The notes under the pieces: model-generated
Told to the model about the DNA's origin: nothing
Seen by the model: only the letters and a program-made list of their open reading frames with translations
Databases searched by the model: none
Shown here: piece after piece, positions 27,627 to 53,620 of the stretch
Layout: every line of letters begins with the position of its first letter
How positions within the stretch are numbered: position 1 is the first letter of the stretch
Origin: Macrostomum lignano
Lineage: Eukaryota
NCBI GenBank assembly: GCA_002269645.1
Contig: NIVC01000257.1
Location: forward strand, 310,001 to 374,000
Direction: 5' to 3'
Length of the DNA: 64,000 nt
Position numbers and translations under genes: made by a program

Positions 27627-28329
27627 TAGGCCTAAGGCAATTCTGCTGAATCCAGTAACAGTCCACTTTGACTTCTGTAACAGCCACTTTGGTAACAGCC
27701 ACTTTGGTAACAAATGAGAATAATATAATATGCATTAATTGATATGCTCTCTCTGAAAGGATGTGCAAACAAACTTTAAAGAAAAAATGACATAACACAT
27801 GCGTACCTGCATGTGTTTAACTTGTTTTAAAGTTTTTTAACCAATCTATTTTAATTTCCGGATGAGTCAGATTTCATGCACCCAAGACATCCTAAAATTG
27901 ACCAAATTTTGTATACTGTATACATTGGAATCTCTGATCTAGTTAGAAAATAGTGACTTAAAATTACAGAATCTACTTTTTTCTTCATTAATTATTTAAT
28001 TTTTTCAATTTCAATGTATGTATGGGAGCTTGCTTTGCTTAATTTTCTTTGCCTTTAAATTTTTCATAAAGTTACTGTGCAAGTTTAAACAAAGTATAAT
28101 ACAGTTTAACTAGAAAGTTTAACAATATGTGCAATAAGATATTTGAGATGTTAATTATTAAACTAATTTTTGCTAAACCTAATTATCATAAAAATAAAGT
28201 GTTGACAGATGTAAATCTGCTTTGTTATCAAAGTGGCAGTTACCAAAGTGTTCATTTTTTGTTACCTAAGTGCCTGTTACCAAAATGGCTATTACCAAAG
28301 TGGATTGTATTCGCTGAATACTAGGCCTA
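27627..28329. mobile_element. MITE/foldback-like element (~700 bp) with imperfect terminal inverted repeats
   Basis: The left end taggccta...attctgctgaatcca...ccactttggtaacagccactttggtaac mirrors the right end gttaccaaagtg...gttaccaaaatggctattaccaaagtggattgtattcgctgaatactaggccta. The interior is AT-rich and non-coding. Confidence 0.6.
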
Positions 28330-29507
28330 GATGATTTGCTGAAAAACTTTCTGCCAAAAGTTGATTTACCAAAACCCTTTTACCAAAAGTCAATTCAATT
28401 AGTGATTTTGGCTAATATAATAGATAGAGTTTATTAAATATCCTACCTAAGTTCATTTTTTTAGATGGCATTTTTGAAAATTATTTTAATTGCATTATCA
28501 ATTATAGAATGCTTCTTTTTGCTAGTGCTAATTTTTTAATGTATGGGGAAATAATTTTAAATATACAACAACTATTATTTATACCTTATTGGTTTGCTCT
28601 TGCATTTGAGCCAATAATTATATATTTTAAAGATAATTTTCAATGAATTATGCAAATATACATGCATTGTGCAAGACATGGCTGGAAAGCAAGACATTCA
28701 TTTTAATATTTAACATTTAACATTTCAACATTATTTGTTTACTAATTAATTCATTTCTTTAATTTTATAATTGTTTATTTTATAATATAGGCCCTATAAA
28801 CAAATATCACAACTTTTTGCAACTATCTAGTGTGCAGAGCCTATTGGCTAACTTATTTCAACATGAAAATTTTCATGATCAATGCACTTTCATGAATCCA
28901 TGATAAAATTTTATATTAGCTGAATCATCTACAAATATCAAGATGAACTTCTGACAAGAAGCTGAGAGTCAAATTATATAATATTCTAACTGACTCACCT
29001 CCCACCATGTCAGTCAGCTTCATTCTGAAAAACATGAAGCTGATTCAGGATAAGGTTTGCTATCAGGCTAATGTGGCAACATGGAGGCTAATATGTAACC
29101 AGTGATTACTCAATGCAAATCAATCCACTCTTAAGTTTTATGCTATTTATAATATACTTATTATCCAATGCTTAGAATGGCTACCAGTGTAGCAAGTTCA
29201 AAACTTTAACTGAATTAGAAAGTCCCGTCAAATATCAAATATTCTAATGTTTTTTTCTAGGAGAGAGGGTCATGGCCCTATACTTTACTTTGGGGGAAGG
29301 CAAGTCAACACCTCGACTCTATTAATGTGTAGTCAATAGTTGACTAATTATGAATTTAGATTAAATTGTACAGCCAATCAATACTAATAACATAGTCTAA
29401 CTAGACAGTTAGTAACTACTGTAGACACTTATAAAACTTCAATTTTGAAATCTTAATCAAATTTATCATCAAACTATTTATTAAACTTTTCTGCTACTCT
29501 CAAATAA

Positions 29508-30811
29508 ATGGCCACATCTGGCAAGATCAAGCTAGTCACCTTTGTTACAGGCAATCCAAACAAACTGCGCGAGTTAAATAGCATCCTACTAACTGCTGGA
29601 TTGTCAGACAGAGTTGTTAATAAGGATATTGATTTGCCAGAGTTGCAAGGCTTGCCTGAGATGGTGAGACATAATCTGCTGTAAATGTAGAGCTGGAATT
29701 GGGTGGCAACCACATAAAACACTGCATAGTGCATAGCCACCAGAAAAATGTACTGTAAGGGGCGTAGCAACCAGATACAAACACTGTAGGGGGCATAGCA
29801 ACCAGATAAAGACACTGTAAGGTGCATAGCAGCCAGATAAAGACACTGTAAGGTGCATAGCAACCAGATAAAGACACTGTATTGGGCATAGCAACCAGAT
29901 AAAGACACTGTATTGGGCATAGCAACGAGATAGACACTGTAAGGTGCATAGCAACCAGATAAAGACACTGTATTGGGCATAGCAACCAGATAAAGACACT
30001 GTAAGGTGCATAGCAGCCAGATAAAGACACTGTAAGGTGCATAGCAACCAGATAAAGACACTGTAAGGTGCATAGCAACCAGATAGACATTGTATTGGGC
30101 ATAGCAACCAGATAGACACTGTATTGGGCATAGCAACCAGATAAAGACACTGTAAGGTGCATGGCAACCAGATAAAGACACTATTGGGCATAGCAACCAG
30201 GTAAAGACACTGTAAGGTGCATAGCAACCAGATAGACACTGTATTGGGCATAGCAACCAGATAGACACTGTATTGGGCATAGCAACCAGATAAACTCTGT
30301 ATAGCAACCAGATGGATTCTGTAGGGGGCGATCAGAATCCCATTAAACGAGCCCATGCCTAACCTCATTCCGTGTGCAGGTGGCCCGCGAAAAGTGCCGC
30401 CTAGCGGCCGAGCGAGTCGGCGGCCCTGTGCTGGTTGAGGACACCAGCCTCTGCTTCAACGCCCTGGGCGGCCTACCGGGGGTGTACATCAAGTGGTTCC
30501 TGGACGCTCTGGGCCCGGACGGCCTGCCCAAACTGTTGGCCGCATTCCCGGACAAGTCGGCCGAGGCTCGCTGCGTGTTCGCCTACAGTCGCGGGCCCGG
30601 CCAGGAGGTGAAGGTTTTCGCCGGAGTGTGTCCGGGCTCCATAGCGGACAAGCCGGCCGGCGATAATCGATTCGGCTGGGACCCGATATTCAAGCCGGAC
30701 GGATTTCACGAGACATTCGCCCAGATGGTGCCGGAAGTGAAGAACACAATTTCTCATCGGGCCAAGGCGTTGTCTTTGGTTCGCGATTTTCTAGTTGGCG
30801 AACTGGAGTGA
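29508..30811 (+). CDS. ITPA: Inosine triphosphate pyrophosphatase, 195 aa; exons 29508-29663 and 30380-30811
   Basis: [61 protein letters not shown] and KNTISHR. GTGAG donor and gtgcAG acceptor, phase 0. Confidence 0.95.
29705..30312. repeat. Minisatellite, 29-31 bp unit (aaggtgcatagcaaccagataaagacactgt), ITPA intron
   Basis: Direct inspection; source of ORFs 29474..30307, 29604..30368 and 29617..30162. Confidence 0.95.
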
Positions 30812-30847
30812 CTTGCGGCCTGCTGGTGATTCTATGGGAATCGGGCT

Positions 30848-31078
30848 GTTGCCATGGCAACCGGTTAATTTTTTCCTCTATGGTAGCGACTAGGATATTC
30901 GTTGCCATGGTAACTCTATATAGTATGTTTGTTACCATGGTGACTCTTTAGTATGTTTTTTGTTGCCATAGTAACTCAAAACTGTCTGTAACCAACTAAT
31001 CTACTCGTTGCCATGGCAACTATCGACTATTCTGGTTTCCATGTCTTAATATCTAATACACTCGTTGCTATAGTAAAC
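30848..31078. promoter_or_regulatory. Cluster of palindromic X-box (RFX-type) motifs
   Basis: GTTGCCATGGCAAC at 30848-30861 and 31007-31020; GTTGCCATGGTAAC at 30901-30914; GTTACCATGGTGAC at 30931-30944; GTTGCCATAGTAAC at 30962-30975; GTTGCTATAGTAAAC at 31064-31078. Confidence 0.45.
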
Positions 31079-31617
31079 AAAGAAAGTAAGCTAATTCAAG
31101 CCAATTTGAAGTGGCCTGCCTTATTAACTAAGAATCACAAAACGCTTACCAAGTTACTTATTTTTCTGTCAATACTGTTTGTTAGCATTGATATGGAGGC
31201 AAAGAAACACAGGTGTTCGATAGTGGTGCGATGTTAAATCCAGAAAAAGTGTGCAAGTTTATATATTGATACTTTTAACATACCGGTATTTGACTTTATC
31301 ATTGCCAATGTCATTATAAACAGCTTTTTATTCAAATTCATCCTAAAACAGGCAATGTTTACCTTTCGTACCTAATGCACTTTAACCGCATTTTAAGGTC
31401 ACTTTTGCACCTCTTGGCTCTTAAAATATTTAACTATTTTTTCTGCTATGTTTTTTTCGATCGGGTTAAAACAATAAATTCAAAGTTATATTTTTATAGC
31501 AAAGGCTAAAGGAATTGGATAAGCTTCTTGTGTTGCTTTTTGGGAATAACTTTGCCTATCTATAGAATGTTTGATATTTTTCACTTTTAATAGAATGGTA
31601 TCAAATCGCTCAACATG

Positions 31618-31950
31618 CTGACCTTAGATGGCCCTGGATAGTTTGACCTTAGATGACCCTGGATAGTTTGACCTTAGATGACCCTAAATAGTGTGATTTA
31701 AGATGACCCTGAATAGTATGACCGACCTTAGATGACCCTGAATAGAATGACCTTAGATGACCCTGAATAGAATGACCTTAGATGACCCTGAATAGAATTG
31801 ACCTTAGATGACCCTTAATAGAATGACCTTAGATGACCCTGAATAGAATGACCTTAGATGACCCTGAATAGAATTGACCTTAGATGACCCTGGATAGTGT
31901 GACCTTAAATGACCCTGGACAGTGTGACCTTCGATAACACTGAATAGTGT
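31618..31950. repeat. Minisatellite, ~23 bp unit (tgaccttagatgaccctgaatag); degenerate units continue to ~32240 beyond the SINE
   Basis: Direct inspection. Confidence 0.92.
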
Positions 31951-31975
31951 GGTTTTAGAAGGCCCTAAGGCCTAA

Positions 31976-32185
31976 GGGATTGTAGCCTAAGTGATTAGAG
32001 CGTCGGACTCACGACCCAGCTGTAAACTTAGTACCAGGATTAGCTGGGGTAATTGAGGGTGTGTGTGGTGACCCCCTCCCCAGTCCTTGGACTGAACAGC
32101 CGTACGCAGCCTTCAGATGCGCCACGCAATAGCTGCGGCTGATCTGTCGGTTGCACACCTGCCCATTAGGGCAGGTGTAATAAAA
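31976..32185 (+). mobile_element. tRNA/CORE-SINE copy with internal deletion (B-box and 5' CORE lost)
   Basis: Closely matches 53116-53353 over acccagctgtaaa...ttagctggggta...gggtgtgtgtgg.gacccc...cagtccttggactgaacagccgtacgcagccttcagatgcgcc. Confidence 0.8.
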
Positions 32186-32348
32186 TGACCCTAATAATGT
32201 AAACTTAGGTGACCCTAGTAGTGTGACCTTAGATGACCTGGATCGTGACTATTTCTACAATTTTTTTCCAAAGTTTATTTTTTCCACACCGGGTGACCCC
32301 AGTTGACCTGCCACTACTTTGACGCTCTCGTTCTTCCTCCCCCCGCAG

Positions 32349-34397
32349 TCTCCCAGCGTCCGGCCATCTGTCATAGCCGTCGGCGGCGCCAGCGGCTTCA
32401 TCGGGCGCTACCTGGTGCGCAGCCTCCGCTCCGCCGGCCACCGGGTAGTCACCGTCGACAGGAGTCGCGGCGCCGGCGACGCCCGCCAGCAGGACGCGCT
32501 GACTTGGCCGGAGGTCGAGCGCTGCGGCCTGCCTGACGGAGTCGAGCTGGTGTGCAATCTGTCCGGCCGGAGCATCCTGGACGCGGGGCCGGCGCTGCGG
32601 CTGTCGACGGTGGCCTACAGGCGCTACGTGAGCGAGCTGTTCGACAGTCGCATCGGCCGGATTCGGTGCCTGGCCGCCGCGGCCGCCGCTGTCAGACCGA
32701 AACCGCCCAGTCGCCTTGTCGGCGTGTCAGCTGTTGGCTACTACCCATCATCTGTGAGTAGAGAGTCCATCTTGAGATCACCATCTTGAGTTCCCTATCC
32801 TAAGAATACTTTTTAATTTTTAATTGAGATCCCATCAAGATCCCCATCAATTCAGATCCCCATCAATTCAGATCCCATCAATTCAGATCCCCATCAATTC
32901 AGATCCCCATCAATTCAGATCCCCATCAATTCAGATCCCCATCAATTCAGATCCCCATCAATTCAGATCCCCATCAATTCAGATCCCATCAAGATCCCCA
33001 TCAATTCAGATCCCCATCAATTCAGATCCCCATCAATTCAGATCCCCATCAATTCAGATCCCCATCAATTCAGATCCCCATCAATTCAGATCCCCATCAA
33101 TTCAGATCCCCATCAATTCAGATCCCCATCAATTCAGATCCTCATCAATTCAGATCCCATCAAGATCCCCATCAATTCAGATCCCCATCAATTCAGATCC
33201 CCATCAATTCAGATCCCCATCAATTCAGATCCCCATCAATTCAGATCCCCATCAATTCAGATCCCCATCAATTCAGATCCTCATCAATTCAGATCCCCAT
33301 CAATTCAGATCCCCATCAATTCAGATCCCATCAAGATCCCCATCAATTCAGATCCCTATCAATTCAGATCCCCATCAATTCAGATCCCCATCAATTCAGA
33401 TCCTCATCAATTCAGATCCCCATAAATTCAGATCCCCATCAAGATCCCCATCAATTCAGATCCCCATCAAGATCCCCATCAATTCAGATCCCCATCAATT
33501 CAGATCCCCATCAATTCAGATCCCCATCAATTCAGATCCCCATCAATTCAGATCCCCATCAATTCAGATCCCCATCAATTGAGATCCCTATCTTGAGATC
33601 CTAACTTTTACTATCTTCCATCAACTAATCTCGCCAATTATCGAATTCTATGTTATTTAAGTTGCAAAAACTTAATTAATTTCCCCAAAATTTACTATTT
33701 TTGGTCCCAATTTTCCATGTCATTATATTCCCATATCTAGGATCTAATCCCATACATTAAATCCCGATCAACCCGTCGCTCCGCCCAGATGCGCGCCGAC
33801 CCGCCGCCCGTGTTCGACGAGTCATACGCAGGGGCGCCGGACGCCAGCCTGGCCGGCCGGCTCTGCGCCAGCATCGAGGCCGCCGTGTTCGAGGGGGCCG
33901 CAAAATCAACAGAAGCAGCAGCTGCCGCTACCGGCGACACTCGCCGCATCGCCGTCCGCATGGGCGTCGCCCTCGGCCGCGACGGTGGCGCCCTGGCCAG
34001 TATGGCCTGGCCGTTCCGTCTGGGCATCGGCGGTCCGACCGGCAGCGGACGTCAGCCCGTCGCCTGGGTGCACATCAGCGACGCTGTTGGCGTCCTTGAG
34101 CACGCCCTGCTGGCCGACCTGCCGCCTCCGACGCCGTCATTCAATTCCGACGTGCTTAACGCCGTGGCGCCGGCCCTCAACACCAACGCTGAACTGGCCG
34201 CCGCTCTGGCTGCCAGTCTGCGACGTCCGGCTCTGCTGACGACGCCTGCCGCTGTCGTCCGGTTGATGTTCGGCGCAGAGCGGGCCGGCGTTCTCACTGA
34301 CGGTGCGTTCGTTTCGCCCCGGCGCACTCTGGAGACCGGCTATCAGTTTCGATTCGTTGACCTGCGCGAGGCTATGCGAGATTTGTTTGGCTCTTGA
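32349..34397 (+). CDS. SDR39U1: Epimerase-family protein SDR39U1 (TIGR01777-like); exons 32349-32753 and 33789-34397; initiator ATG not encoded in exon 1
   Basis: Rossmann motif VIAVGGASGFIGRYLV, then VCNLSG, ELFDSRI, GVSAVGYYP, RMGVALGRDGGAL, PFRLGIGGPTGSGRQPVAWVHISD, NAVAP and PRRTLETGYQFRF. GTGAGT donor at 32754 and cccAG acceptor at 33787-33788, phase 0. Confidence 0.9.
32826..33602. repeat. Minisatellite, 16-bp unit (atccccatcaattcag), SDR39U1 intron
   Basis: Direct inspection. Confidence 0.97.
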
Positions 34398-34950
34398 AGT
34401 CTGCATTTGATTTAGTGCAAACCAAACTTTTTATAGCATTAGTTCTTTTAAAGTACTCGTTTACTTAGAAAGAACATCCGTACTTGCATAGTACATCCGT
34501 ACTTACAAACTCCATACGTAATTTAAAAGTTCATGCGTAGTTACAAAGTGCGTGCGTGCTAACAAAGTACATGCGTACTTGCAAAGTACATGCGTACTTA
34601 CTAAGTACTCGATTTACTCATAAATTTGTTGCGTGCTCCTAAAGTACTTCTTAATGTTAACAACAACAACAACCTTGGATCTTAATGTTAAACATGTTTC
34701 ATAGTTACTCCAGCTCACTGTGAATACTTGAATTCAGCTATTGCTTGATGAAGGTTAGTTATAAGTCATTCAGACATATAAATATACCAAAATATAACAG
34801 ATTTATTCGATATTTTCTTCCATGAAAATAGCCAATTGGTGTATGTCTCCATTCATTAAAATACGAGTATTTCATCATTCGCTTACTATAAGTAGCTAAT
34901 ACAGTAAGTAGCTCGTATATTTTATTGATTTTTCAGATTTCTCCATTAAA

Positions 34951-35885
34951 ATGACTGGCGGCGGGCTCTACGAAGCTGAGGGGGCCGCCCAGGCTGTGCT
35001 GATCGGCCTGACCGCCGTGCTGGCCTGCCTGCTGGCCACCCTGGCGCAGCAGCTGATGAGGCGACGCCAGCTGACGGCCCGCTGGGCGGCCGAGGCGGCG
35101 GCTTACAGCGCGCGAGCAAACGGTGCTTAGCCCGCTTCGCTTTCATTCTAGACTAGCAATCCATTCTAGGCTAGCAATCCATTCTAGACTAGCAATCCAT
35201 TCTAGACTAGCAATCCATTCTAGACTAGCAATCCATTCTAGACTAGCAATCCATTCTAGACTAGCAATCCATTCTAGACTAGCAATCCATTCTAGACTAG
35301 CAATCCATTCTAGACCAGCAATCCACTCTAGACTAGCAATCCATTCTAGACTAGCAATCCATTCTAGGCTAGCAATCCATTCTAGACTAGCAATCCATTC
35401 TAGGTTAGCAATCCATTCTAGGCTAGCAATCCATTCTAGGCTAGTAAATCCTATCTAGGCTAGCAATCCATTCTAGACTAGCAATCCATCAGAAATCCAT
35501 TGCAGAGTAGATTAGCAATCCATTATATGTAGATTAGATTAGCAACCCACCCTAATTCTCCCGCACCTCATCAGACCAGGCAGCCGAGTCAGTCAGCGCT
35601 GAGGATGCAGGAGCCAGTGAGATGGGGCAGCAGCAGCAACAGGTGGCAGCCGCAGATGCTGTCCCATTCACTCACCTTCCCGGCAGTTTGAAACGCGCCG
35701 AGCAGGCAAAAATTCTCCAAAGCCTGTCGGAGGAGGAGCTGCAACTCGAGCGGGACGCCGTGATGGACCAGCTGAGGCAGATCTGCGGCATCCTGGCTGA
35801 GCGGCAGGGCGGCGAGGCTGGCGGCGAACTGCCGCCTGAAGCTTCTCTGAATGAAGTGCGCAGCCAGATGCGACTCTATTCTTAG
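34951..35885 (+). CDS. MXRA7: MXRA7-like single-pass membrane protein, 160 aa; exons 34951-35122 and 35575-35885
   Basis: Exon 1 (59 codons, absent from the ORF track) encodes the TM helix AAQAVLIGLTAVLACLLATLA followed by RRR. The splice G|GTGCTT to catcAG|AC is frame-consistent. The C-terminus LSEEELQLERDAVMDQLRQICGIL...EVRSQMRLYS resembles, from memory, the MXRA7 tail (MTKEELEEEQRVQKEQLAAIFKLM...DVQEQLRLY). Confidence 0.6.
35146..35500. repeat. Minisatellite, 18-bp unit (tctagactagcaatccat), intron of the MXRA7-like gene
   Basis: Direct inspection. Confidence 0.95.
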
Positions 35886-35886
35886 C

Positions 35887-36522
35887 CTGCTGCTCTCTGA
35901 TTGGTTGGAATGGAGTCCCGCTGTTCTCTGATTGGTTGAAATATTGGAGTCACACTGCTCTCCGATTGGTTGCAATATTGGAGTCCAGCTGCTCTCCGAT
36001 TGGTTGCAATATTGGAGTCCAGCTGCTCTCCGATTAGTTGCAATATTGGAGTCCAGCTGCTCTCCGATTGGTTGCAATATTGGAGTCCAGCTGCTCTCTG
36101 ATTGGTTGCAATATTGGAGTCCCACTGCTCTCTGATTGGTTATAATGGAGTCCACTGCTTTCTGATTGGTTGGAATGGAGGCCTGCTGCTCTCTGATTGG
36201 TTGGAATGGTGGCCTGCTGCTCTCTGATTGGTTGGGAAATTGGAGTCTCACTGTTTTCAGATTGGTTGGAATGAAGGCCTGTTGCTCTCTGATTGGTTGG
36301 AATGGAGGCCTGCTGCTCTCTGATTGGTTGGGAAATTGGAGTCTCACTGTTTTCAGATTGGTTGGAATGAAGGCCTGTTGCTCTCTGATTGGTTGGAATG
36401 GAGGCCTGCTGCTCTCTGATTGGTTGGGAAATTGGAGTCTCACTGTTTTCAGATTGGTTGGAATGAAGGCCTGTTGCTCTCTGATTGGTTGGAATGAAGG
36501 CCTGCTGCTGCTCTGATTGGTC
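35887..36522. repeat. Minisatellite (ctgctctctgattggttg... units, two sub-arrays) starting right after the MXRA7-like stop
   Basis: Direct inspection; ATTGG (reverse CCAAT) in nearly every unit. Confidence 0.92.
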
Positions 36523-36944
36523 AGTAAAGTTAAGACCGGCATTTATCCGTCAAGTTATTGAATATTAATGACATAAATTCCCTACTGTCTGATTAGCTGA
36601 AGCTGTTTACTTGTAGTTATCGCTTTAACCTGTTACTTATGACAACACCCTGACATTCGAATTGCAGTATATTTATCTGTTATTGACTGACATTGTCTCA
36701 TATTTGCTTCCTTTTAAGCTAAGCTTGTAGTGTCCTCAGTTTAAACTGCCAATGCCGTATTAATGCTTTGTTTTGTCGATGTTGTGCATACATTTACATA
36801 GACTTTTAGGTTCTACTTATACGCTCGTAGTAGCACGTTTGAGACTTTTTTATTCTGATGCCGTAAATGGATTTTGTATATAATTTATTGCCTAGATTGT
36901 TTTGTATTAAATGCGTTTTAAAACTCCAAATAAGTCGGCTCCGG

Positions 36945-37572
36945 GGCGACTCTAGTGATTCTGGAGTGACTCTTGTGATTCTGGAGCGACTCAAGTGACT
37001 CTGGAGCGACTCAAGTGACTCTGGAGCGACTCGAGTGACTCTGGAGCGACTCTAGTGATTCTTGAGCGACTCAAGTGACTTTGGAGCGACTCTGGTGATT
37101 CTGGAGCGACTCAAGTGATTCTTGAGCGACTCTAGTGACTCTGGAGCGACTCAAGTGATTCTGGGGCGACTCTAGTGACTCTGGAGCGGCTCTAGTAACT
37201 CTGGAGCGACTCAAGTGATTCTGGAGCGACTCTAGTGATTCTGGAGCGACTCAAGTGACTCTGGAGCGACTCTAGTGATTCTGGAGCGACTCAAGTGACT
37301 CTGGAGCGACTCTAGTGACTCTGGAGCGACTCAAGTGACTCTGGAGCGACTCTAGTAATTCTTGAGCGACTCTAGTGACTCTGGAGCGACTCAAGTGATT
37401 CTGGAGCGACTCAAGTGACTCTGGAGCGACTCAAGTGATTCTGGGGCGACTCTAGTGACTCTGGAGCGGCTCTAGTAACTCTCGAGCGACTCTAGTGACT
37501 CTGGAGCGGCTCTAGTAACTCTCGAGCGACTCTAGTGACTCTGGAGCGACTCTAGTGATTCTGGAGCGATTC
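36945..37572. repeat. Minisatellite, 20-bp unit (ctctagtgactctggagcga)
   Basis: Direct inspection. Confidence 0.95.
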
Positions 37573-38325
37573 TCCAAGGCGCTAAAAAGTTGCAGAAGAA
37601 GCGCTTTAGGGTAGAATCGTTAGTGCGTCACAAGTTACAGTTACACAATAAGCGCTCAGTTTTAGCCTTTTTGAACTTCAATTGCACTCTAACTAGCCTA
37701 CTGAGTTAGTAGAAAGTTAAGCTTCAACACAACGATTCTTGGACGACTCTTTCGCGCGACTCTTTTACAATTCTGCAATTTGCGTGACGCGCTTGTGACG
37801 CAACAGTCGCCTCTTCATCAGACATGTTCGTTCACTACGAGTATCTGCTGCTTTGGCAAAAATGGTTTTTTATACACTACCTCTTCGCTTATATCATTCT
37901 TACTTGTGTACTGAACCTGCAATGACTGCTTTTACTAGGATTATAAATATACACTGCAGATGGCCTTTGACGGGTGTCATCTGGTACATTTTTTCTATTG
38001 GCTTTTAGCAGACCTGTGTGCCGAGCCATTGCAAATCTAATCTTGCATTCAAGGCCTCTGTTTTTTCATCCTACATTTTTTAAAGCTTTTCAATTGGCAT
38101 TTCTTGAACGCATCAGCCTTTGGAGCTGGGCTTGTTTAAACTGCTTGGTGGTTCAAGGCCTGGACTGATTTCCGCCAATGATTATTACACAGCGTTTCTC
38201 TGCCGCTGTGTGATATGCCATGCATGATTGCGAGATCAGTATTTAGCCTCTCATCTCATGCATGTGACTCCGTGCGACTTTTCCGCCTTTTCGGGCGCTT
38301 GGATCTGCGCATTGTTATGCACAGA

Positions 38326-38995
38326 CACTCTGGCACTCTGTTCTGTATTCTGGCACTCTCTGCTGCACTCTGTTCTGTATTCTGGCACTCTCTGCTGCAC
38401 TCTGTTCTGTATTCTGGCACTCTCTGCTGCACTCTGTTCTGTATTCTGGCACTCTCTGCTGCACTCTGTTCTGTATTCTGGCACACTCTGCTGCACTCTT
38501 CTGTATTCTGGCACTCTCTGCTGCACTCTGTTCTGTATTCTGGCACTCTCCTGCTGCACTCTTCTGTATTCTGGCACTCTCTGCTGCACTCTGTTCTGTA
38601 TTCTGGCACTCTCCTGCTGCACTCTTCTGTATTCTGGCACTCTCTGCTGCACTCTGTTCTGTATTCTGGCACTCTCTGCTGCACTCTGTTCTGTATTCTG
38701 GCACTCTCTGCTGCACTCTGTTCTGTATTCTGGCACTCTCTGCTGCACTCTGTTCTGTATTCTGGCACTCTCTGCTGCACTCTGTTCTGTATTCTGGCAC
38801 TCTCTGCTGCACTCTGTTCTGTATTCTGGCACTCTCTGCTGCACTCTGTTCTGTATTCTGGCACTCTCTGCTGCACTCTGTTCTGTATTCTGGCACTCTC
38901 TGCTGCACTCTGTTCTGTATTCTGGCACTCTCTGCTGCACTCTGTTCTGTATTCTGGCACTCTGCTGCACTCTGTTCTGTATTCTGGCACTCCTT
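38326..38995. repeat. Minisatellite, ~32-bp unit (ctctgttctgtattctggcactctctgctgca)
   Basis: Direct inspection; source of ORFs in 38215..39031. Confidence 0.96.
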
Positions 38996-40337
38996 CTGGT
39001 GGGCACTCTCCCTAGTCACTCTAGTACGTAGTACTTTTTAAGGCACTCTGTACTCGTATATGATAACTGCGCTTCGCTAAATTCAGCGCTAGACATGACT
39101 TCTACAGCATTGGTCGCCTGGTGCATATCTGGAGGCAATAATCCGTCTCCTTCCATGCAATCATCTATTACCCAAACCCAATAGTTCCAATCCCACGCAG
39201 TTCATTTATCCTGCCAACAGACTAACAGTTACAGGAACACTATGTTTACGCGCAATCGCCTCCGCGTGTACTAATAGCTATGGCGGTCGCCTAGGGGCTA
39301 TGCAATTTGTTGTTTTTTTGTTTGCTATTTTCGCGTTCGAGCCGTACTTAAGTTCAACTGGCTGGCTGCTGATAAATCTTCTAATTTTTTAATACATTTC
39401 GCATATATATAAACGCATCACGCTAAAATGAGCATTGAGAGAGAGAGTTCGGCCGAGGGAAGGGCGGAGTAATAAGAGCCCGATTCGGCGGCCTGTGGAA
39501 TGTATTTAGCGATGGAGGGGAGGCCAGCGGTGTCGGAGGCAGAAAGACGGCAATTGGGCAGAGGGGAGGAGGCAGAGAGTGACGAGGTCTCCTGAGGGCA
39601 GGCGGGGAGCGTGGGCGGCGCTAGGTCCAAAGCCCTGTACAGTACACTCTGCCCTGTACAGGGGAGAGAGGGCGAGGGGAGAGGAGAGGAGAGAGTCATC
39701 CTCTTTATACACAAGCTCAGCCAGCATGCCCTGCCCGTTATATATGAGAGAGAGAGAGAGAGCCTTCCAGTGTGTCCAATCTTGTCCAATACCAAGCAAG
39801 AGACTCTCCTTGGAGATCTCAATTTTGTACGGTCTCCCAGACTCTCACAACCAGTGAATAGAGTTCCGTCTCTCTTTCTCTATAATATAAATAAGCCCAA
39901 GCAGTAGTAGTGTTGAATAAGCCCGAATAGACCTTTATTGTTGGCGGCGGCGGAGCGGCACAAGGTTAGTCATCAGCCCGGGGTCGAGCAAATGAGGGTG
40001 GCCCCAACAGTCAGGCAGTTTGCTGTGTTTTTTACTGCCCTTAAGCACTCCCACGCACAGTTTTGCGATTCTCTTCCTCTCCCCCTCTACTTCTGTCTGC
40101 TTCGTTTTTCTCTCACCTCCTGGCGTTTTACTTTCTATCTTGGGGTTCTACTAGCTGAGGGTGACCCCATCCAAGCCCCTCCGTCTGTCTGTCTGCCTGC
40201 CTGCCTCCCCCCGACTCCGGTTTCAGCCAGCTGAATCCAGTAATATATTTTTTTAAATACGAAACACTCTGTCCTTTATTATTGATCGATTTAAGGTCCA
40301 TAGGAATCGCTTATATTTCACTGTAGATTGAGCGGTC

Positions 40338-52420: not shown

Positions 52421-53620
52421 TCATCGCTTCAAATCGCCCAGATCCTCGATTCGCTCCTCGTCGATGCTCGGCCACCGCTCCGGCAGCAGGTCGAACAGGT
52501 CGTCCCGCACGTCGCCCTGGATCACAATCTCGTCCCCGTTGCCCGTGACGCTGGCGCCGGTGGCGAACTTCTGGCCAAACACCCGGGAGGCCTCCTTCAG
52601 ATCGATGCCGAACGAGGACAAGCCGGTGACCACCGTCACCGACTTCCGCTTGCCCCGCTGCGCTCGGGACAGGCAAATCCTGGCCTGATCGGCCGCCTCC
52701 TTCTTCTTCTTGGCCTCCTTGTTTCCGCCCTTGCCGCCCCGGGTCTGGCGCTTCTTCTTGTCGTCGTCCGCCTCGTCTGCCGCCGCGGCCCCTGTGTTCA
52801 GCCGGGCGAACTCTTCGGGCAGGTTTTGCTCCAGCCAGGCCCTGTGGGAATGTCAGCCAATTCCATCTTTCTTGAGAGAGTGTACATGCCTGATGATTAG
52901 AAAGTCAGGGCTGCTGTACACTCTGAGTGAGCTGTGCATGAGTGCCGTGCCTGCGTACAGTATTGACGCGCTTGTATGTACATCATGTCGCCGAAGGCGT
53001 TTCAGCTGTTTACGTGTGCATGTCGTCACTTCCAACTGCCCGTATTTTCATTAAAAAATTGCTCACGCATTCTTCAATACTACTGAACTGAAAGTAGAGA
53101 AACTGTTTTCGTTTTGGGGGATTCTAGCCTAGTGGTTAGCGCGGCGGATTCACGGCTAAAAGGTCGGGGGTTCGATTCTTGACACATTTAGAACAATTTG
53201 TGTCCTTGAGCAAGACACTTAAATCTGCAGTGCTTCAGTTCACCCAGCTGTAAAATGGATGCCAGCATTAGCTGGGGTAGTTAAGGGTGTGTGTGGCGAC
53301 CCCCCACCCCCAGTCCTTGGACTGAACAGCCGTACGCAGCCTTCAGATGCGCCGCTGTTTCTACTGTTTCGAATAAAATAAAAAGTACTTCACCTGCACG
53401 CGCCAGGATCCGGGGAAAACTCGCACAGCTCCAGCGGCAGGGAGCAGGCGCCGCAGTACTGCACCTGCAGTGGGTAGCGCACCCCCGGCACCGGCTTCGG
53501 TTCCGACAGGAAGCCGCCGCAGGCTGTAGCCGACAGAGCGGCGGGGGCGGCGGCTGCGGATGGCGCCGAAGACTCAGCCGGCGGCGGCGCCTCTCTGTCG
53601 CTCTGGCCGCCGTCTGACAT
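52421..53620 (-). CDS. DENR: Density-regulated protein (SUI1-domain reinitiation factor), 215 aa; exons 53620-53394 and 52841-52421
   Basis: YPLQVQYCGACSLPLELCEF, AWLEQNLPEEF, KKKRQTRGGKG, RGKRKSVTVVTGLSSFGIDLKEASRVFGQKFATGASV, DEIVIQGDV and IEDLGD. The phase-2 junction AG|G is consistent. Confidence 0.95.
53116..53353 (+). mobile_element. tRNA-derived CORE-SINE in the DENR intron (antisense to DENR)
   Basis: A-box TAGCCTAGTGG at 53125-53135 and B-box GGTTCGATTC at 53169-53178. A CORE-like tgtgtccttgagcaagacacttaa...cttcagttcacccagctgtaaaatgg follows. A second copy lies at 31976. Confidence 0.8.

What the first reader, a model, noticed from the sequence alone, without database searches (positions are those of the whole stretch)
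32325..32420. SDR39U1 has no genomic start codon: a phase-0 acceptor fits an AUG donated by the flatworm spliced leader
Seen: ttcttcctccccccgcAG|TCT CCC AGC GTC... leads within about 8 codons into the Rossmann motif VIAVGGASGFIG, which in this family lies at the extreme N-terminus. There is no in-frame ATG in the exon or before the upstream stop (the ORF track used a TTG). Known: flatworm spliced leaders end in AUG, which can serve as the initiator Met. Inference: the protein starts M-SPSVRPSVIAVGG only after trans-splicing. A competing model is a 12-nt cis exon ATGACCTGGATC|GT at 32233-32244, but it has a weak donor and lies in a minisatellite remnant.
Basis: partly seen in the sequence, partly recalled or inferred. 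Interest (0 to 1): 0.72.

Follow-up and report, generated by a model that had tools for sequence, protein, structure and literature searches.

The report
Flatworm gene borrows its start codon
This Macrostomum lignano SDR39U1 gene has no start codon of its own and most likely gets its AUG from the spliced leader added by trans-splicing, which is a known flatworm mechanism, so this is a clean new example and not a new phenomenon.

Summary
The window is Macrostomum lignano scaffold NIVC01000257.1 (bases 300001-364000).

- **The gene.** A two-exon SDR39U1/TIGR01777-type gene lies at 32349..32753 and 33789..34397. Exon A opens directly after a pyrimidine tract and AG (32347-48).
- **No genomic start.** There is an in-frame TGA at 32304-06. 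No ATG occurs in any frame until codon 136. The family profile already begins at residue 9.
- **Public annotation.** The GenBank CDS (PAA86934.1, Mlig015606g3, "partial") starts exactly at 32349. That annotation sets mRNA 5' ends where it has leader-containing RNA-seq reads.
- **Operon.** ITPA, SDR39U1 and an MXRA7-like gene are g2, g3 and g4 of one transcriptional unit.
- **The leader.** The published M. lignano leader ends ...TTGCATG, and joining it to TCT at 32349 puts that ATG in frame.
- **Rival cis exon.** None of about 30 possible upstream ATG...|GT exons has a consensus donor.

I saw no reads directly, and translation from the leader AUG is inferred. A second AG 8 nt downstream would put that AUG out of frame.

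Use of the leader AUG as initiator was shown in Schistosoma in 2006 and is noted for Macrostomum. Novelty is therefore low: a new member of a known kind.

The parts
32325..32348 (+). 3' end of the outron: pyrimidine tract ctctcgttcttcctcccccc, then gcAG (AG at 32347-48). This is the proposed leader trans-splice acceptor.
   Evidence: Sequence read. The published trans-acceptor motif is [T/C]TNCAG (PMC8629364), and here the site is CCGCAG, one mismatch. The GenBank CDS begins at the next base. The site is identical in three genomic copies apart from the tract length.
32349..32753 (+). SDR39U1 coding exon A, 135 codons, phase 0 at both ends. It reads SPSVRPSVIAVGGASGFIG...GYYPSS and contains no ATG in any frame. 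The donor is gtgagt at 32754.
   Evidence: It is 100% identical to PAA86934.1.
32754..33788 (+). Intron holding a 16-nt minisatellite (AGATCCCCATCAATTC, about 49 copies, 32838-33592). The acceptor is cccAG at 33787-88.
33789..34397 (+). SDR39U1 coding exon B, including the stop TGA at 34395-97. Its first codon is the first genomic in-frame ATG (Met136 of the exon-A/exon-B reading, Met137 counting the leader Met).
32304..32306 (+). In-frame TGA, 15 codons upstream of the acceptor. It closes the frame in the outron.
32355..32356 (+). Second AG (tctcccAG|C), 8 nt downstream of the first. A leader joined here puts its AUG out of frame and opens a 59-codon ORF that ends at 32536.
   Evidence: The paralogue's CDS (PAA85349.1) begins at the first whole codon after this AG.
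32233..32244 (+). Rejected.
   Evidence: The donor lacks the GT[G/A]AG consensus (motif from PMC8629364). In copy L001 the ATG is replaced (CTGACCTGGGTC) and 58 nt are inserted. It is part of a minisatellite remnant.
29508..30811 (+). Upstream cistron ITPA (Mlig015606g2). Exon 1 is 29508-29663 with its own ATG, phase 0, donor gtgaga. Exon 2 is 30380-30811.
   Evidence: ITPA is flagged TRANSSPLICED with an mRNA length of 1351 nt in the supplement of PMC5816591.
31473..31478 (+). AATAAA, the likely poly(A) signal of ITPA. With an acceptor at tgtAG 29423-24 it reproduces the published mRNA length of 1351 nt and leaves about 860 nt to the SDR39U1 acceptor.
   Evidence: signal; sequence. The arithmetic is my inference.
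31619..32246 (+). Repeat filling of the intercistronic region: a 25-nt minisatellite (31619-31947, remnant 32185-32246) interrupted by a dispersed repeat.
   Evidence: The stretch 32014-32123 has an 89%-identical copy at 53242-53353.
34934..34953 (+). Start of the downstream cistron (MXRA7-like, Mlig015606g4, 'partial'). The acceptor is tttCAG (34934-36), the exon starts at 34937, and its own ATG is at 34951.
   Evidence: The CDS is annotated from 34939, the first whole codon after the acceptor.

Best explanation
The Macrostomum lignano SDR39U1 gene (Mlig015606g3) is an internal gene of a polycistronic transcriptional unit, ITPA - SDR39U1 - MXRA7-like.

1. Its mature mRNA is made when the 35-nt spliced leader (...TTGCATG) is trans-spliced onto the acceptor AG at 32347-48.
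2. The leader's terminal AUG then sits directly before TCT at 32349, in frame, and serves as the only available initiator.
3. The product is a 338-residue protein, M-SPSVRPSVIAVGGASGFIG..., with the NAD(P)-binding Rossmann motif in its normal N-terminal place.

The genome itself encodes no start codon for this protein.

- **Shown:** the sequence anatomy, the organism and its leader sequence, the annotated 5' end at the acceptor, membership of one transcriptional unit, and the lack of an alternative ATG.
- **Inferred:** that the annotated 5' end rests on leader-containing reads at exactly this base, and that ribosomes start at the leader AUG.
For: 1. The organism is M. lignano, and the window equals NIVC01000257.1:300001-364000.
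2. The leader ends in ATG and is followed by a GTAAG donor (PMC8629364). In Macrostomum this ATG is described as a likely translation start codon (PMC10468722).
3. GenBank CDS PAA86934.1 is 'partial' and starts exactly at 32349. The annotation pipeline sets mRNA 5' ends at peaks of leader-containing reads, where it had them, and then runs TransDecoder (PMC5730564). Because an in-frame stop lies 15 codons upstream, a 5'-partial ORF can only be called if the transcript starts at the acceptor.
4. The neighbouring 'partial' gene g4 likewise starts at the first whole codon after a perfect TTTCAG acceptor.
5. ITPA, SDR39U1 and the MXRA7-like gene are g2, g3 and g4 of one unit. In the paralogous locus ITPA and SDR39U1 are g1 and g2. 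Older models run SDR39U1 on into the downstream gene.
6. There is no ATG in any frame before codon 136. The family profile starts at residue 9. The motif is at residue 7 in 70 of 91 homologues.
7. There are 31-34 candidate upstream ATG...|GT exons in each of the three copies, and none has a GT[G/A]AG donor.
8. [quoted passage not shown] Similar cases are reported in Echinococcus (PMC3510090).
Against: - No leader-containing read or cDNA for this gene could be inspected with these tools. The link from annotation to reads is indirect.
- The annotated CDS starts differ among the three identical-sequence copies: +0 in the window, +6 in L003 and +9 in L001. Either boundary calling is imprecise, or the second AG at 32355-56 is also used. 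That AG would put the leader AUG out of frame.
- The acceptor is one mismatch from the published [T/C]TNCAG motif.
- The leader AUG has U at -3 and U at +4, a weak context by vertebrate rules.
- The three copies are recent duplicates, so their agreement says little about long-term constraint. pN/pS is about 0.68 from 11 codon differences.
Confidence: 0.78

Rival explanations
1. A short cis-spliced 5' exon upstream supplies the ATG. This is either the reader's 12-nt ATGACCTGGATC at 32233-44 or another ATG...|GT segment in the 1.5 kb between ITPA and the acceptor.
For: Phase-0 open ATG...|GT segments do exist: 34 in the window. The 12-nt one lies 104 nt upstream.
Against: None of the 31-34 candidates in any of the three copies has the GT[G/A]AG donor consensus (motif). 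The 12-nt exon loses its ATG and gains a 58-nt insertion in copy L001, yet that copy's CDS is intact. All candidates lie in minisatellite or dispersed-repeat sequence. None of five gene models contains an upstream exon.
Confidence: 0.05
2. Trans-splicing mainly uses the second AG (32355-56). The leader AUG is then out of frame and opens a 59-codon ORF, so this mRNA form does not make SDR39U1. It could be a non-productive or regulatory isoform.
For: The paralogue's annotated CDS starts at the first whole codon after this AG, although its sequence is identical there. The site TCCCAG fits the motif as well as CCGCAG does.
Against: The window's own model and two WormBase models start at the first AG. 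In the usual scanning model of 3' splice-site choice (general knowledge), the first AG after the pyrimidine tract is preferred. A gene that made only this form would not keep three intact ORFs.
Confidence: 0.07
3. The ATG comes from ITPA exon 1. Cis-splicing from its phase-0 donor (gtgaga at 29664) to the phase-0 acceptor at 32349 would give an in-frame ITPA(1-52)-SDR39U1 fusion.
For: The phases match. Both genes are in one transcriptional unit. In parasitic flatworms acceptors are often shared between cis- and trans-splicing (PMC12582326).
Against: No annotated isoform shows it. The one fused public model (P0005) joins different points and is full of frameshifts from the older assembly. The fusion would place 52 foreign residues in front of a Rossmann fold that normally starts at residue 1-2.
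Confidence: 0.04
4. Translation starts at a near-cognate codon, either the in-frame TTG at 32319 or ACG at 32322 on an unspliced RNA, or the locus is not translated at all because it is a decaying duplicate.
For: In-frame TTG and ACG codons follow the TGA at 32304. pN/pS between copies is not clearly below 1.
Against: Those codons lie inside the pyrimidine tract of a well-formed acceptor, and no model keeps them. All three copies have intact 337-codon ORFs. The coding sequence is 98.8-100% identical, against 90-94% with indels in the flanks.
Confidence: 0.04

Closest known systems
[quoted passage not shown]
   Same: The leader ends in AUG. The acceptor is in phase with the main ORF. No other AUG preserves the conserved N-terminus. 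The gene is a conserved housekeeping-type enzyme.
   Different: The species is different: a free-living macrostomorph, not a parasitic neodermatan. This gene has not been described individually. Translation from the leader AUG was tested experimentally in Schistosoma, according to the citing papers, but not here.
M. lignano leader trans-splicing and operons (Wudarski et al. 2017, PMC5730564; Ustyantsev & Berezikov 2021, PMC8629364)
   Same: Adjacent same-strand genes lie in one transcriptional unit. The downstream genes begin at YNNCAG-type acceptors. The intercistronic DNA is swollen by repeats, as those authors describe.
   Different: Those papers do not discuss genes that depend on the leader AUG. 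The ITPA-to-SDR39U1 spacing of about 860 nt is far above their modal 100 bp, though it falls under their 1-kb repeat-adjusted threshold.
slORFs (ORFs created by leader addition; slORFfinder, PMC9851317)
   Same: The ORF exists only in the trans-spliced mRNA.
   Different: Here the leader-initiated ORF is the canonical conserved protein, not an extra or alternative ORF.
SDR39U1 / TIGR01777 (YfcH) epimerase-family oxidoreductases
   Same: It has an N-terminal Rossmann GxxGxxG, the Epimerase (PF01370) and DUF1731 (PF08338) domains, full-length profile coverage, and 42% identity to a vertebrate SDR39U1.
   Different: It scores 189 bits, below the 207-bit curated cut-off of the bacterial TIGR01777 model. 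Alanine- and proline-rich inserts bring it to 338 residues.

Membership tests
Leader-AUG-initiated flatworm mRNAs | The organism's spliced leader ends in AUG immediately before its donor site | tested here: met
   The window is identified as M. lignano. The published leader is ...TTGCATG followed by GTAAG (PMC8629364; PMC5173321). No leader gene lies in the window itself.
Leader-AUG-initiated flatworm mRNAs | The mRNA's 5' end is a trans-splice acceptor, that is, the gene is leader trans-spliced | tested here: met
   The test is indirect. The GenBank 5'-partial CDS starts at the base after AG 32347-48, and it comes from a pipeline that sets 5' ends at leader-read peaks where available. I did not see the reads.
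Leader-AUG-initiated flatworm mRNAs | The leader AUG is in frame with the main ORF with no intervening stop | tested here: met
   The leader joined to 32349 gives ATG TCT CCC..., a 338-codon ORF.
Leader-AUG-initiated flatworm mRNAs | No genomic AUG can give the conserved N-terminus | tested here: met
   The first genomic in-frame ATG is codon 136. The family profile starts at residue 9.
Leader-AUG-initiated flatworm mRNAs | Ribosomes actually initiate at the leader AUG | not testable with these tools
   This needs ribosome profiling, N-terminal proteomics or a reporter.
M. lignano operon (criteria of PMC8629364) | Adjacent genes on the same strand, the downstream gene trans-spliced, and a repeat-adjusted intergenic distance under 1 kb | tested here: met
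   All three genes are on the + strand and are g2, g3 and g4 of one transcriptional unit. The distance from the inferred ITPA poly(A) site to the acceptor is about 860 nt, of which at least 383 nt is tandem repeat. The poly(A) site is inferred from AATAAA and the published mRNA length.
SDR39U1 / TIGR01777 | N-terminal Rossmann GxxGxxG plus the Epimerase and DUF1731 domains | tested here: met
   PF01370 and PF08338 were found on the protein. The motif GGASGFIG is at residues 12-19.
SDR39U1 / TIGR01777 | Score above the curated TIGR01777 cut-off | tested here: not met
   The score is 189.1 bits against a cut-off of 207.35, although the alignment covers profile positions 1-292 of 292. The model is built for bacterial and archaeal annotation. 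The best named eukaryotic hit is SDR39U1 at 42% identity.

The most novel reading that the evidence does not exclude
SDR39U1 in M. lignano may be wholly dependent on the leader AUG, and the two AGs 8 nt apart (32347-48 in frame, 32355-56 out of frame) may act as a productive/non-productive switch. Choice of trans-splice site, not transcription of the shared operon, would then set how much enzyme is made. More broadly, loss of genomic start codons in operon-internal genes might be common in this early-branching flatworm. That would date reliance on the leader AUG to the base of Rhabditophora.
Probability: 0.12. Interest if true: 0.45.

Novelty: new member of a known kind. Interest (0 to 1): 0.22.

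Why it matters
For annotators, this case explains why many M. lignano proteins are deposited as 'partial'. These are complete proteins whose first codon lives on another RNA, and pipelines that trim the leader's ATG will systematically mis-call them.

For biology, it is a tidy example outside the parasitic flatworms of a conserved enzyme that cannot be made without trans-splicing. M. lignano is transgenic-tractable, so the mechanism could be tested directly with a reporter.

It does not open a new question, because the mechanism has been known since 2006.

Tried and rejected
- **Direct RNA evidence.** The protein search returned only genome-derived M. lignano models and no run-assembly (Logan) transcript fragments. 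I therefore could not inspect any leader-to-exon junction.
- **Supplementary tables.** Those of PMC5816591 and PMC5730564 do not list this gene. Only ITPA appears, flagged TRANSSPLICED.
- **Leader gene in the window.** None was found.
- **The tRNA-like-looking stretch at 31975-32050.** ARAGORN found no tRNA. Rfam gave only a sub-threshold Trp_leader hit (28.9 bits against a 41-bit threshold), which I dismiss as chance.
- **Selection test between copies.** There are too few differences (4 synonymous, 7 non-synonymous) to be informative.
- **Depletion of out-of-frame ATGs in the CDS.** Zero were observed against 2.3 expected, P about 0.06, which is not significant.
- **Cheng et al. 2006.** The paper is not held in the library, so I cite its content only through papers that quote it.
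- **The fused ITPA-SDR39U1 public model (P0005).** I judge it an artefact of the older, frameshift-rich assembly.

Full report
**1. The observation**

- A pyrimidine tract (ctctcgttcttcctcccccc) runs into gcAG, with the AG at 32347-48. TCT CCC AGC GTC follows from 32349.
- In that frame the translation is *PATTLTLSFFLPPQ|SPSVRPSVIAVGGASGFIG..., with a TGA at 32304-06 and no ATG up to the exon's donor, gtgagt at 32754.
- The mechanical ORF list starts the ORF at TTG 32319.
- The 12-nt candidate exon ATGACCTGGATC|GTGACT is at 32233-32244.

**2. What the gene is**

Joining 32349..32753 to 33789..34397 gives a 337-residue product. The second exon follows the acceptor cccAG, and the stop is TGA at 34395-97.
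- The product is 100% identical over its full length to GenBank PAA86934.1, [quoted passage not shown].
- The window corresponds to NIVC01000257.1:300001-364000 of assembly GCA_002269645.1.
- The protein carries the Epimerase (PF01370) and DUF1731 (PF08338) domains. Its best named eukaryotic relative is a bird SDR39U1 at 42% identity.
- It aligns to the whole TIGR01777 profile (positions 1-292) starting at residue 9. The score of 189 bits is below the curated cut-off of 207.
- Among 91 single-domain homologues from the search, the first glycine of the Rossmann motif is residue 7 in 70. [quoted passage not shown]
- In the spliced mRNA the next ATG in any frame is codon 136, the first codon of exon B. 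Starting there would delete the dinucleotide-binding half of the enzyme.

**3. Evidence that the 5' end is a trans-splice site**

- The M. lignano leader is CGGTCTCTTACTGCGAAGACTCAATTTATTGCATG, followed in the leader-RNA gene by a GTAAG donor. About 30% of genes are trans-spliced and about 15% lie in operons. The enriched trans-acceptor motif is [T/C]TNCAG (PMC8629364).
- The Mlig_3_7 annotation was built by assembling transcriptional units. These were then cut into genes at peaks of leader-containing reads and at poly(A) sites, where such evidence was available (the TBONE pipeline). TransDecoder was run afterwards (PMC5730564).
- The deposited CDS for this gene is 5'-partial and begins at exactly 32349. 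An in-frame stop lies only 15 codons upstream. A 5'-partial call is therefore possible only if the transcript model itself begins at the acceptor.
- The next gene downstream behaves the same way. PAA86935.1 (Mlig015606g4, partial, MXRA7-like) begins at 34939, the first whole codon after a perfect TTTCAG acceptor (34934-36).
- ITPA, SDR39U1 and the MXRA7-like gene are named Mlig015606g2, g3 and g4. In the paralogous locus ITPA and SDR39U1 are Mlig029812g1 and g2. They are consecutive genes of one transcriptional unit.
- Older WormBase models (A0A1I8HSI4, A0A1I8HS24) also begin SPSV without a Met and run on into the downstream gene. That is what an uncut polycistronic transcript would give.
- ITPA is flagged TRANSSPLICED with an mRNA of 1351 nt (supplement of PMC5816591). 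An acceptor at tgtAG 29423-24 plus cleavage about 13 nt after the AATAAA at 31473 reproduces that length. This leaves an intercistronic gap of about 860 nt, of which at least 383 nt is tandem repeat.

**4. The join**

The leader joined to 32349 reads ...TTGC ATG TCT CCC AGC..., a 338-codon ORF beginning MSPSVRPSVIAVGG.

**5. Rivals**

*(a) Upstream cis exon.* I listed every open, phase-0 ATG...|GT segment between the ITPA stop and the acceptor in all three genomic copies. Each copy has 31-34, and none has a GT[G/A]AG donor. In copy L001 its ATG is replaced (CTGACCTGGGTC) and 58 nt are inserted, while the coding sequence stays intact. It is the tail of a 25-nt minisatellite that was split by a dispersed repeat, which has another copy at 53242-53353.

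*(b) A second AG at 32355-56.* This is real and deserves mention. A leader joined there puts the AUG out of frame and opens a 59-codon ORF ending at 32536. The paralogue's deposited CDS begins at the first whole codon after that AG. The third copy's CDS begins at +6, which fits no AG. The sequences are identical across the three copies here. The scatter therefore reflects either imprecise boundary calls or real alternative use of the two AGs.

*(c) ITPA exon 1.* Exon 1 (29508-29663) ends in phase 0 with a consensus donor. A cis-splice to 32349 would be in frame, but no model shows it.

*(d) Near-cognate starts.* The TTG at 32319 and ACG at 32322 lie inside the pyrimidine tract and are removed by splicing.

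*(e) Pseudogene.* All three copies keep intact ORFs. Coding identity is 98.8-100%, against 90-94% with indels in the flanks. With only 11 differing codons, however, pN/pS (about 0.68) is uninformative.

**6. Comparison with what is known**

- All reported flatworm leaders end in AUG (PMC12582326).
- Cheng et al. 2006 reported that in Schistosoma mansoni the leader AUG is in frame in 28% of trans-spliced mRNAs, and that more than 40 cDNAs need it to initiate in the right frame (as summarised in PMC9851317).
- Echinococcus shows the same, including cases where the leader AUG is needed to match conserved N-termini (PMC3510090).
- For Macrostomum, the genome paper on M. cliftonense and M. hystrix notes that the leader likely contains the final ATG as a translation start codon (PMC10468722).
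- I found no paper that discusses this gene, or that counts leader-AUG-dependent genes in M. lignano.

**7. Verdict**

The mechanism is established in the phylum, and the public annotation already implies it for this gene through the 'partial' flag at the acceptor. This is a new, clear example of a known kind, in a free-living model flatworm.

Still untested are the read-level junction, the relative use of the two AGs, and initiation at the leader AUG. My confidence in the main explanation is 0.78, and I set interest at 0.22.

Noticed in passing
window 32355-32356 (and L001 5998-5999): A second AG lies 8 nt after the main acceptor. A leader joined there would put its AUG out of frame and give a 59-codon ORF ending at 32536. 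The paralogue's deposited CDS starts just after this AG, although the sequence is identical in all three copies.
   Followed up: partly
window 34934-34953: The downstream MXRA7-like gene (Mlig015606g4) starts after a TTTCAG acceptor. A leader AUG joined there would open a 6-codon uORF (ATGATTTCTCCATTAAAATGA) whose TGA stop overlaps the gene's own ATG at 34951 (ATGA).
   Followed up: partly
window 29508-29663 and 32349: ITPA exon 1 ends in phase 0 with a consensus donor (gtgaga). A cis-splice to the SDR39U1 acceptor would therefore be in frame. No model shows such a fusion.
   Followed up: partly
window 32014-32123 and 53242-53353: A dispersed repeat (89% identity over 112 nt) is inserted into the 25-nt minisatellite array between ITPA and SDR39U1. 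It looked tRNA-like by eye, but ARAGORN finds no tRNA.
   Followed up: partly
window 29508-29663 vs 30380-30811 and 32349-34397: GC content steps sharply between exons. ITPA exon 1 is 44% GC and its exon 2 is 63%. The two SDR39U1 exons are 69-71%.
   Followed up: no
window 28000-40000: Nearly every intron and intergenic spacer holds a long minisatellite. Examples are a 31-nt unit with 19 copies in the ITPA intron, a 16-nt unit with 49 copies in the SDR39U1 intron, and 18-, 20-, 32- and 34-nt arrays further on.
   Followed up: no
window 32349-34394: All five ATGs in the SDR39U1 coding sequence are in frame and none is out of frame. Zero out-of-frame ATGs were observed against 2.3 expected from codon shuffles (P about 0.06). 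Exon A has no ATG in any frame (P about 0.04).
   Followed up: yes
L003 2544-4260; L005 between 14143 and 20948: The paralogous loci differ in annotation. The third copy's ITPA product is 128 aa instead of 195. The second copy has no annotated MXRA7-like gene between SDR39U1 and bestrophin.
   Followed up: no
window 32142-32267: Rfam gives a sub-threshold match to the bacterial Trp_leader family (28.9 bits against a 41-bit threshold, E = 0.002). I take it as chance in repeat-derived sequence.
   Followed up: yes
window 29419-29424 and 40320-40325: ITPA and bestrophin are both preceded by ACTGTAG shortly upstream of their own ATG (83 nt and 12 nt). These may be their trans-splice acceptors, of a TAG type rather than CAG.
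   Followed up: no
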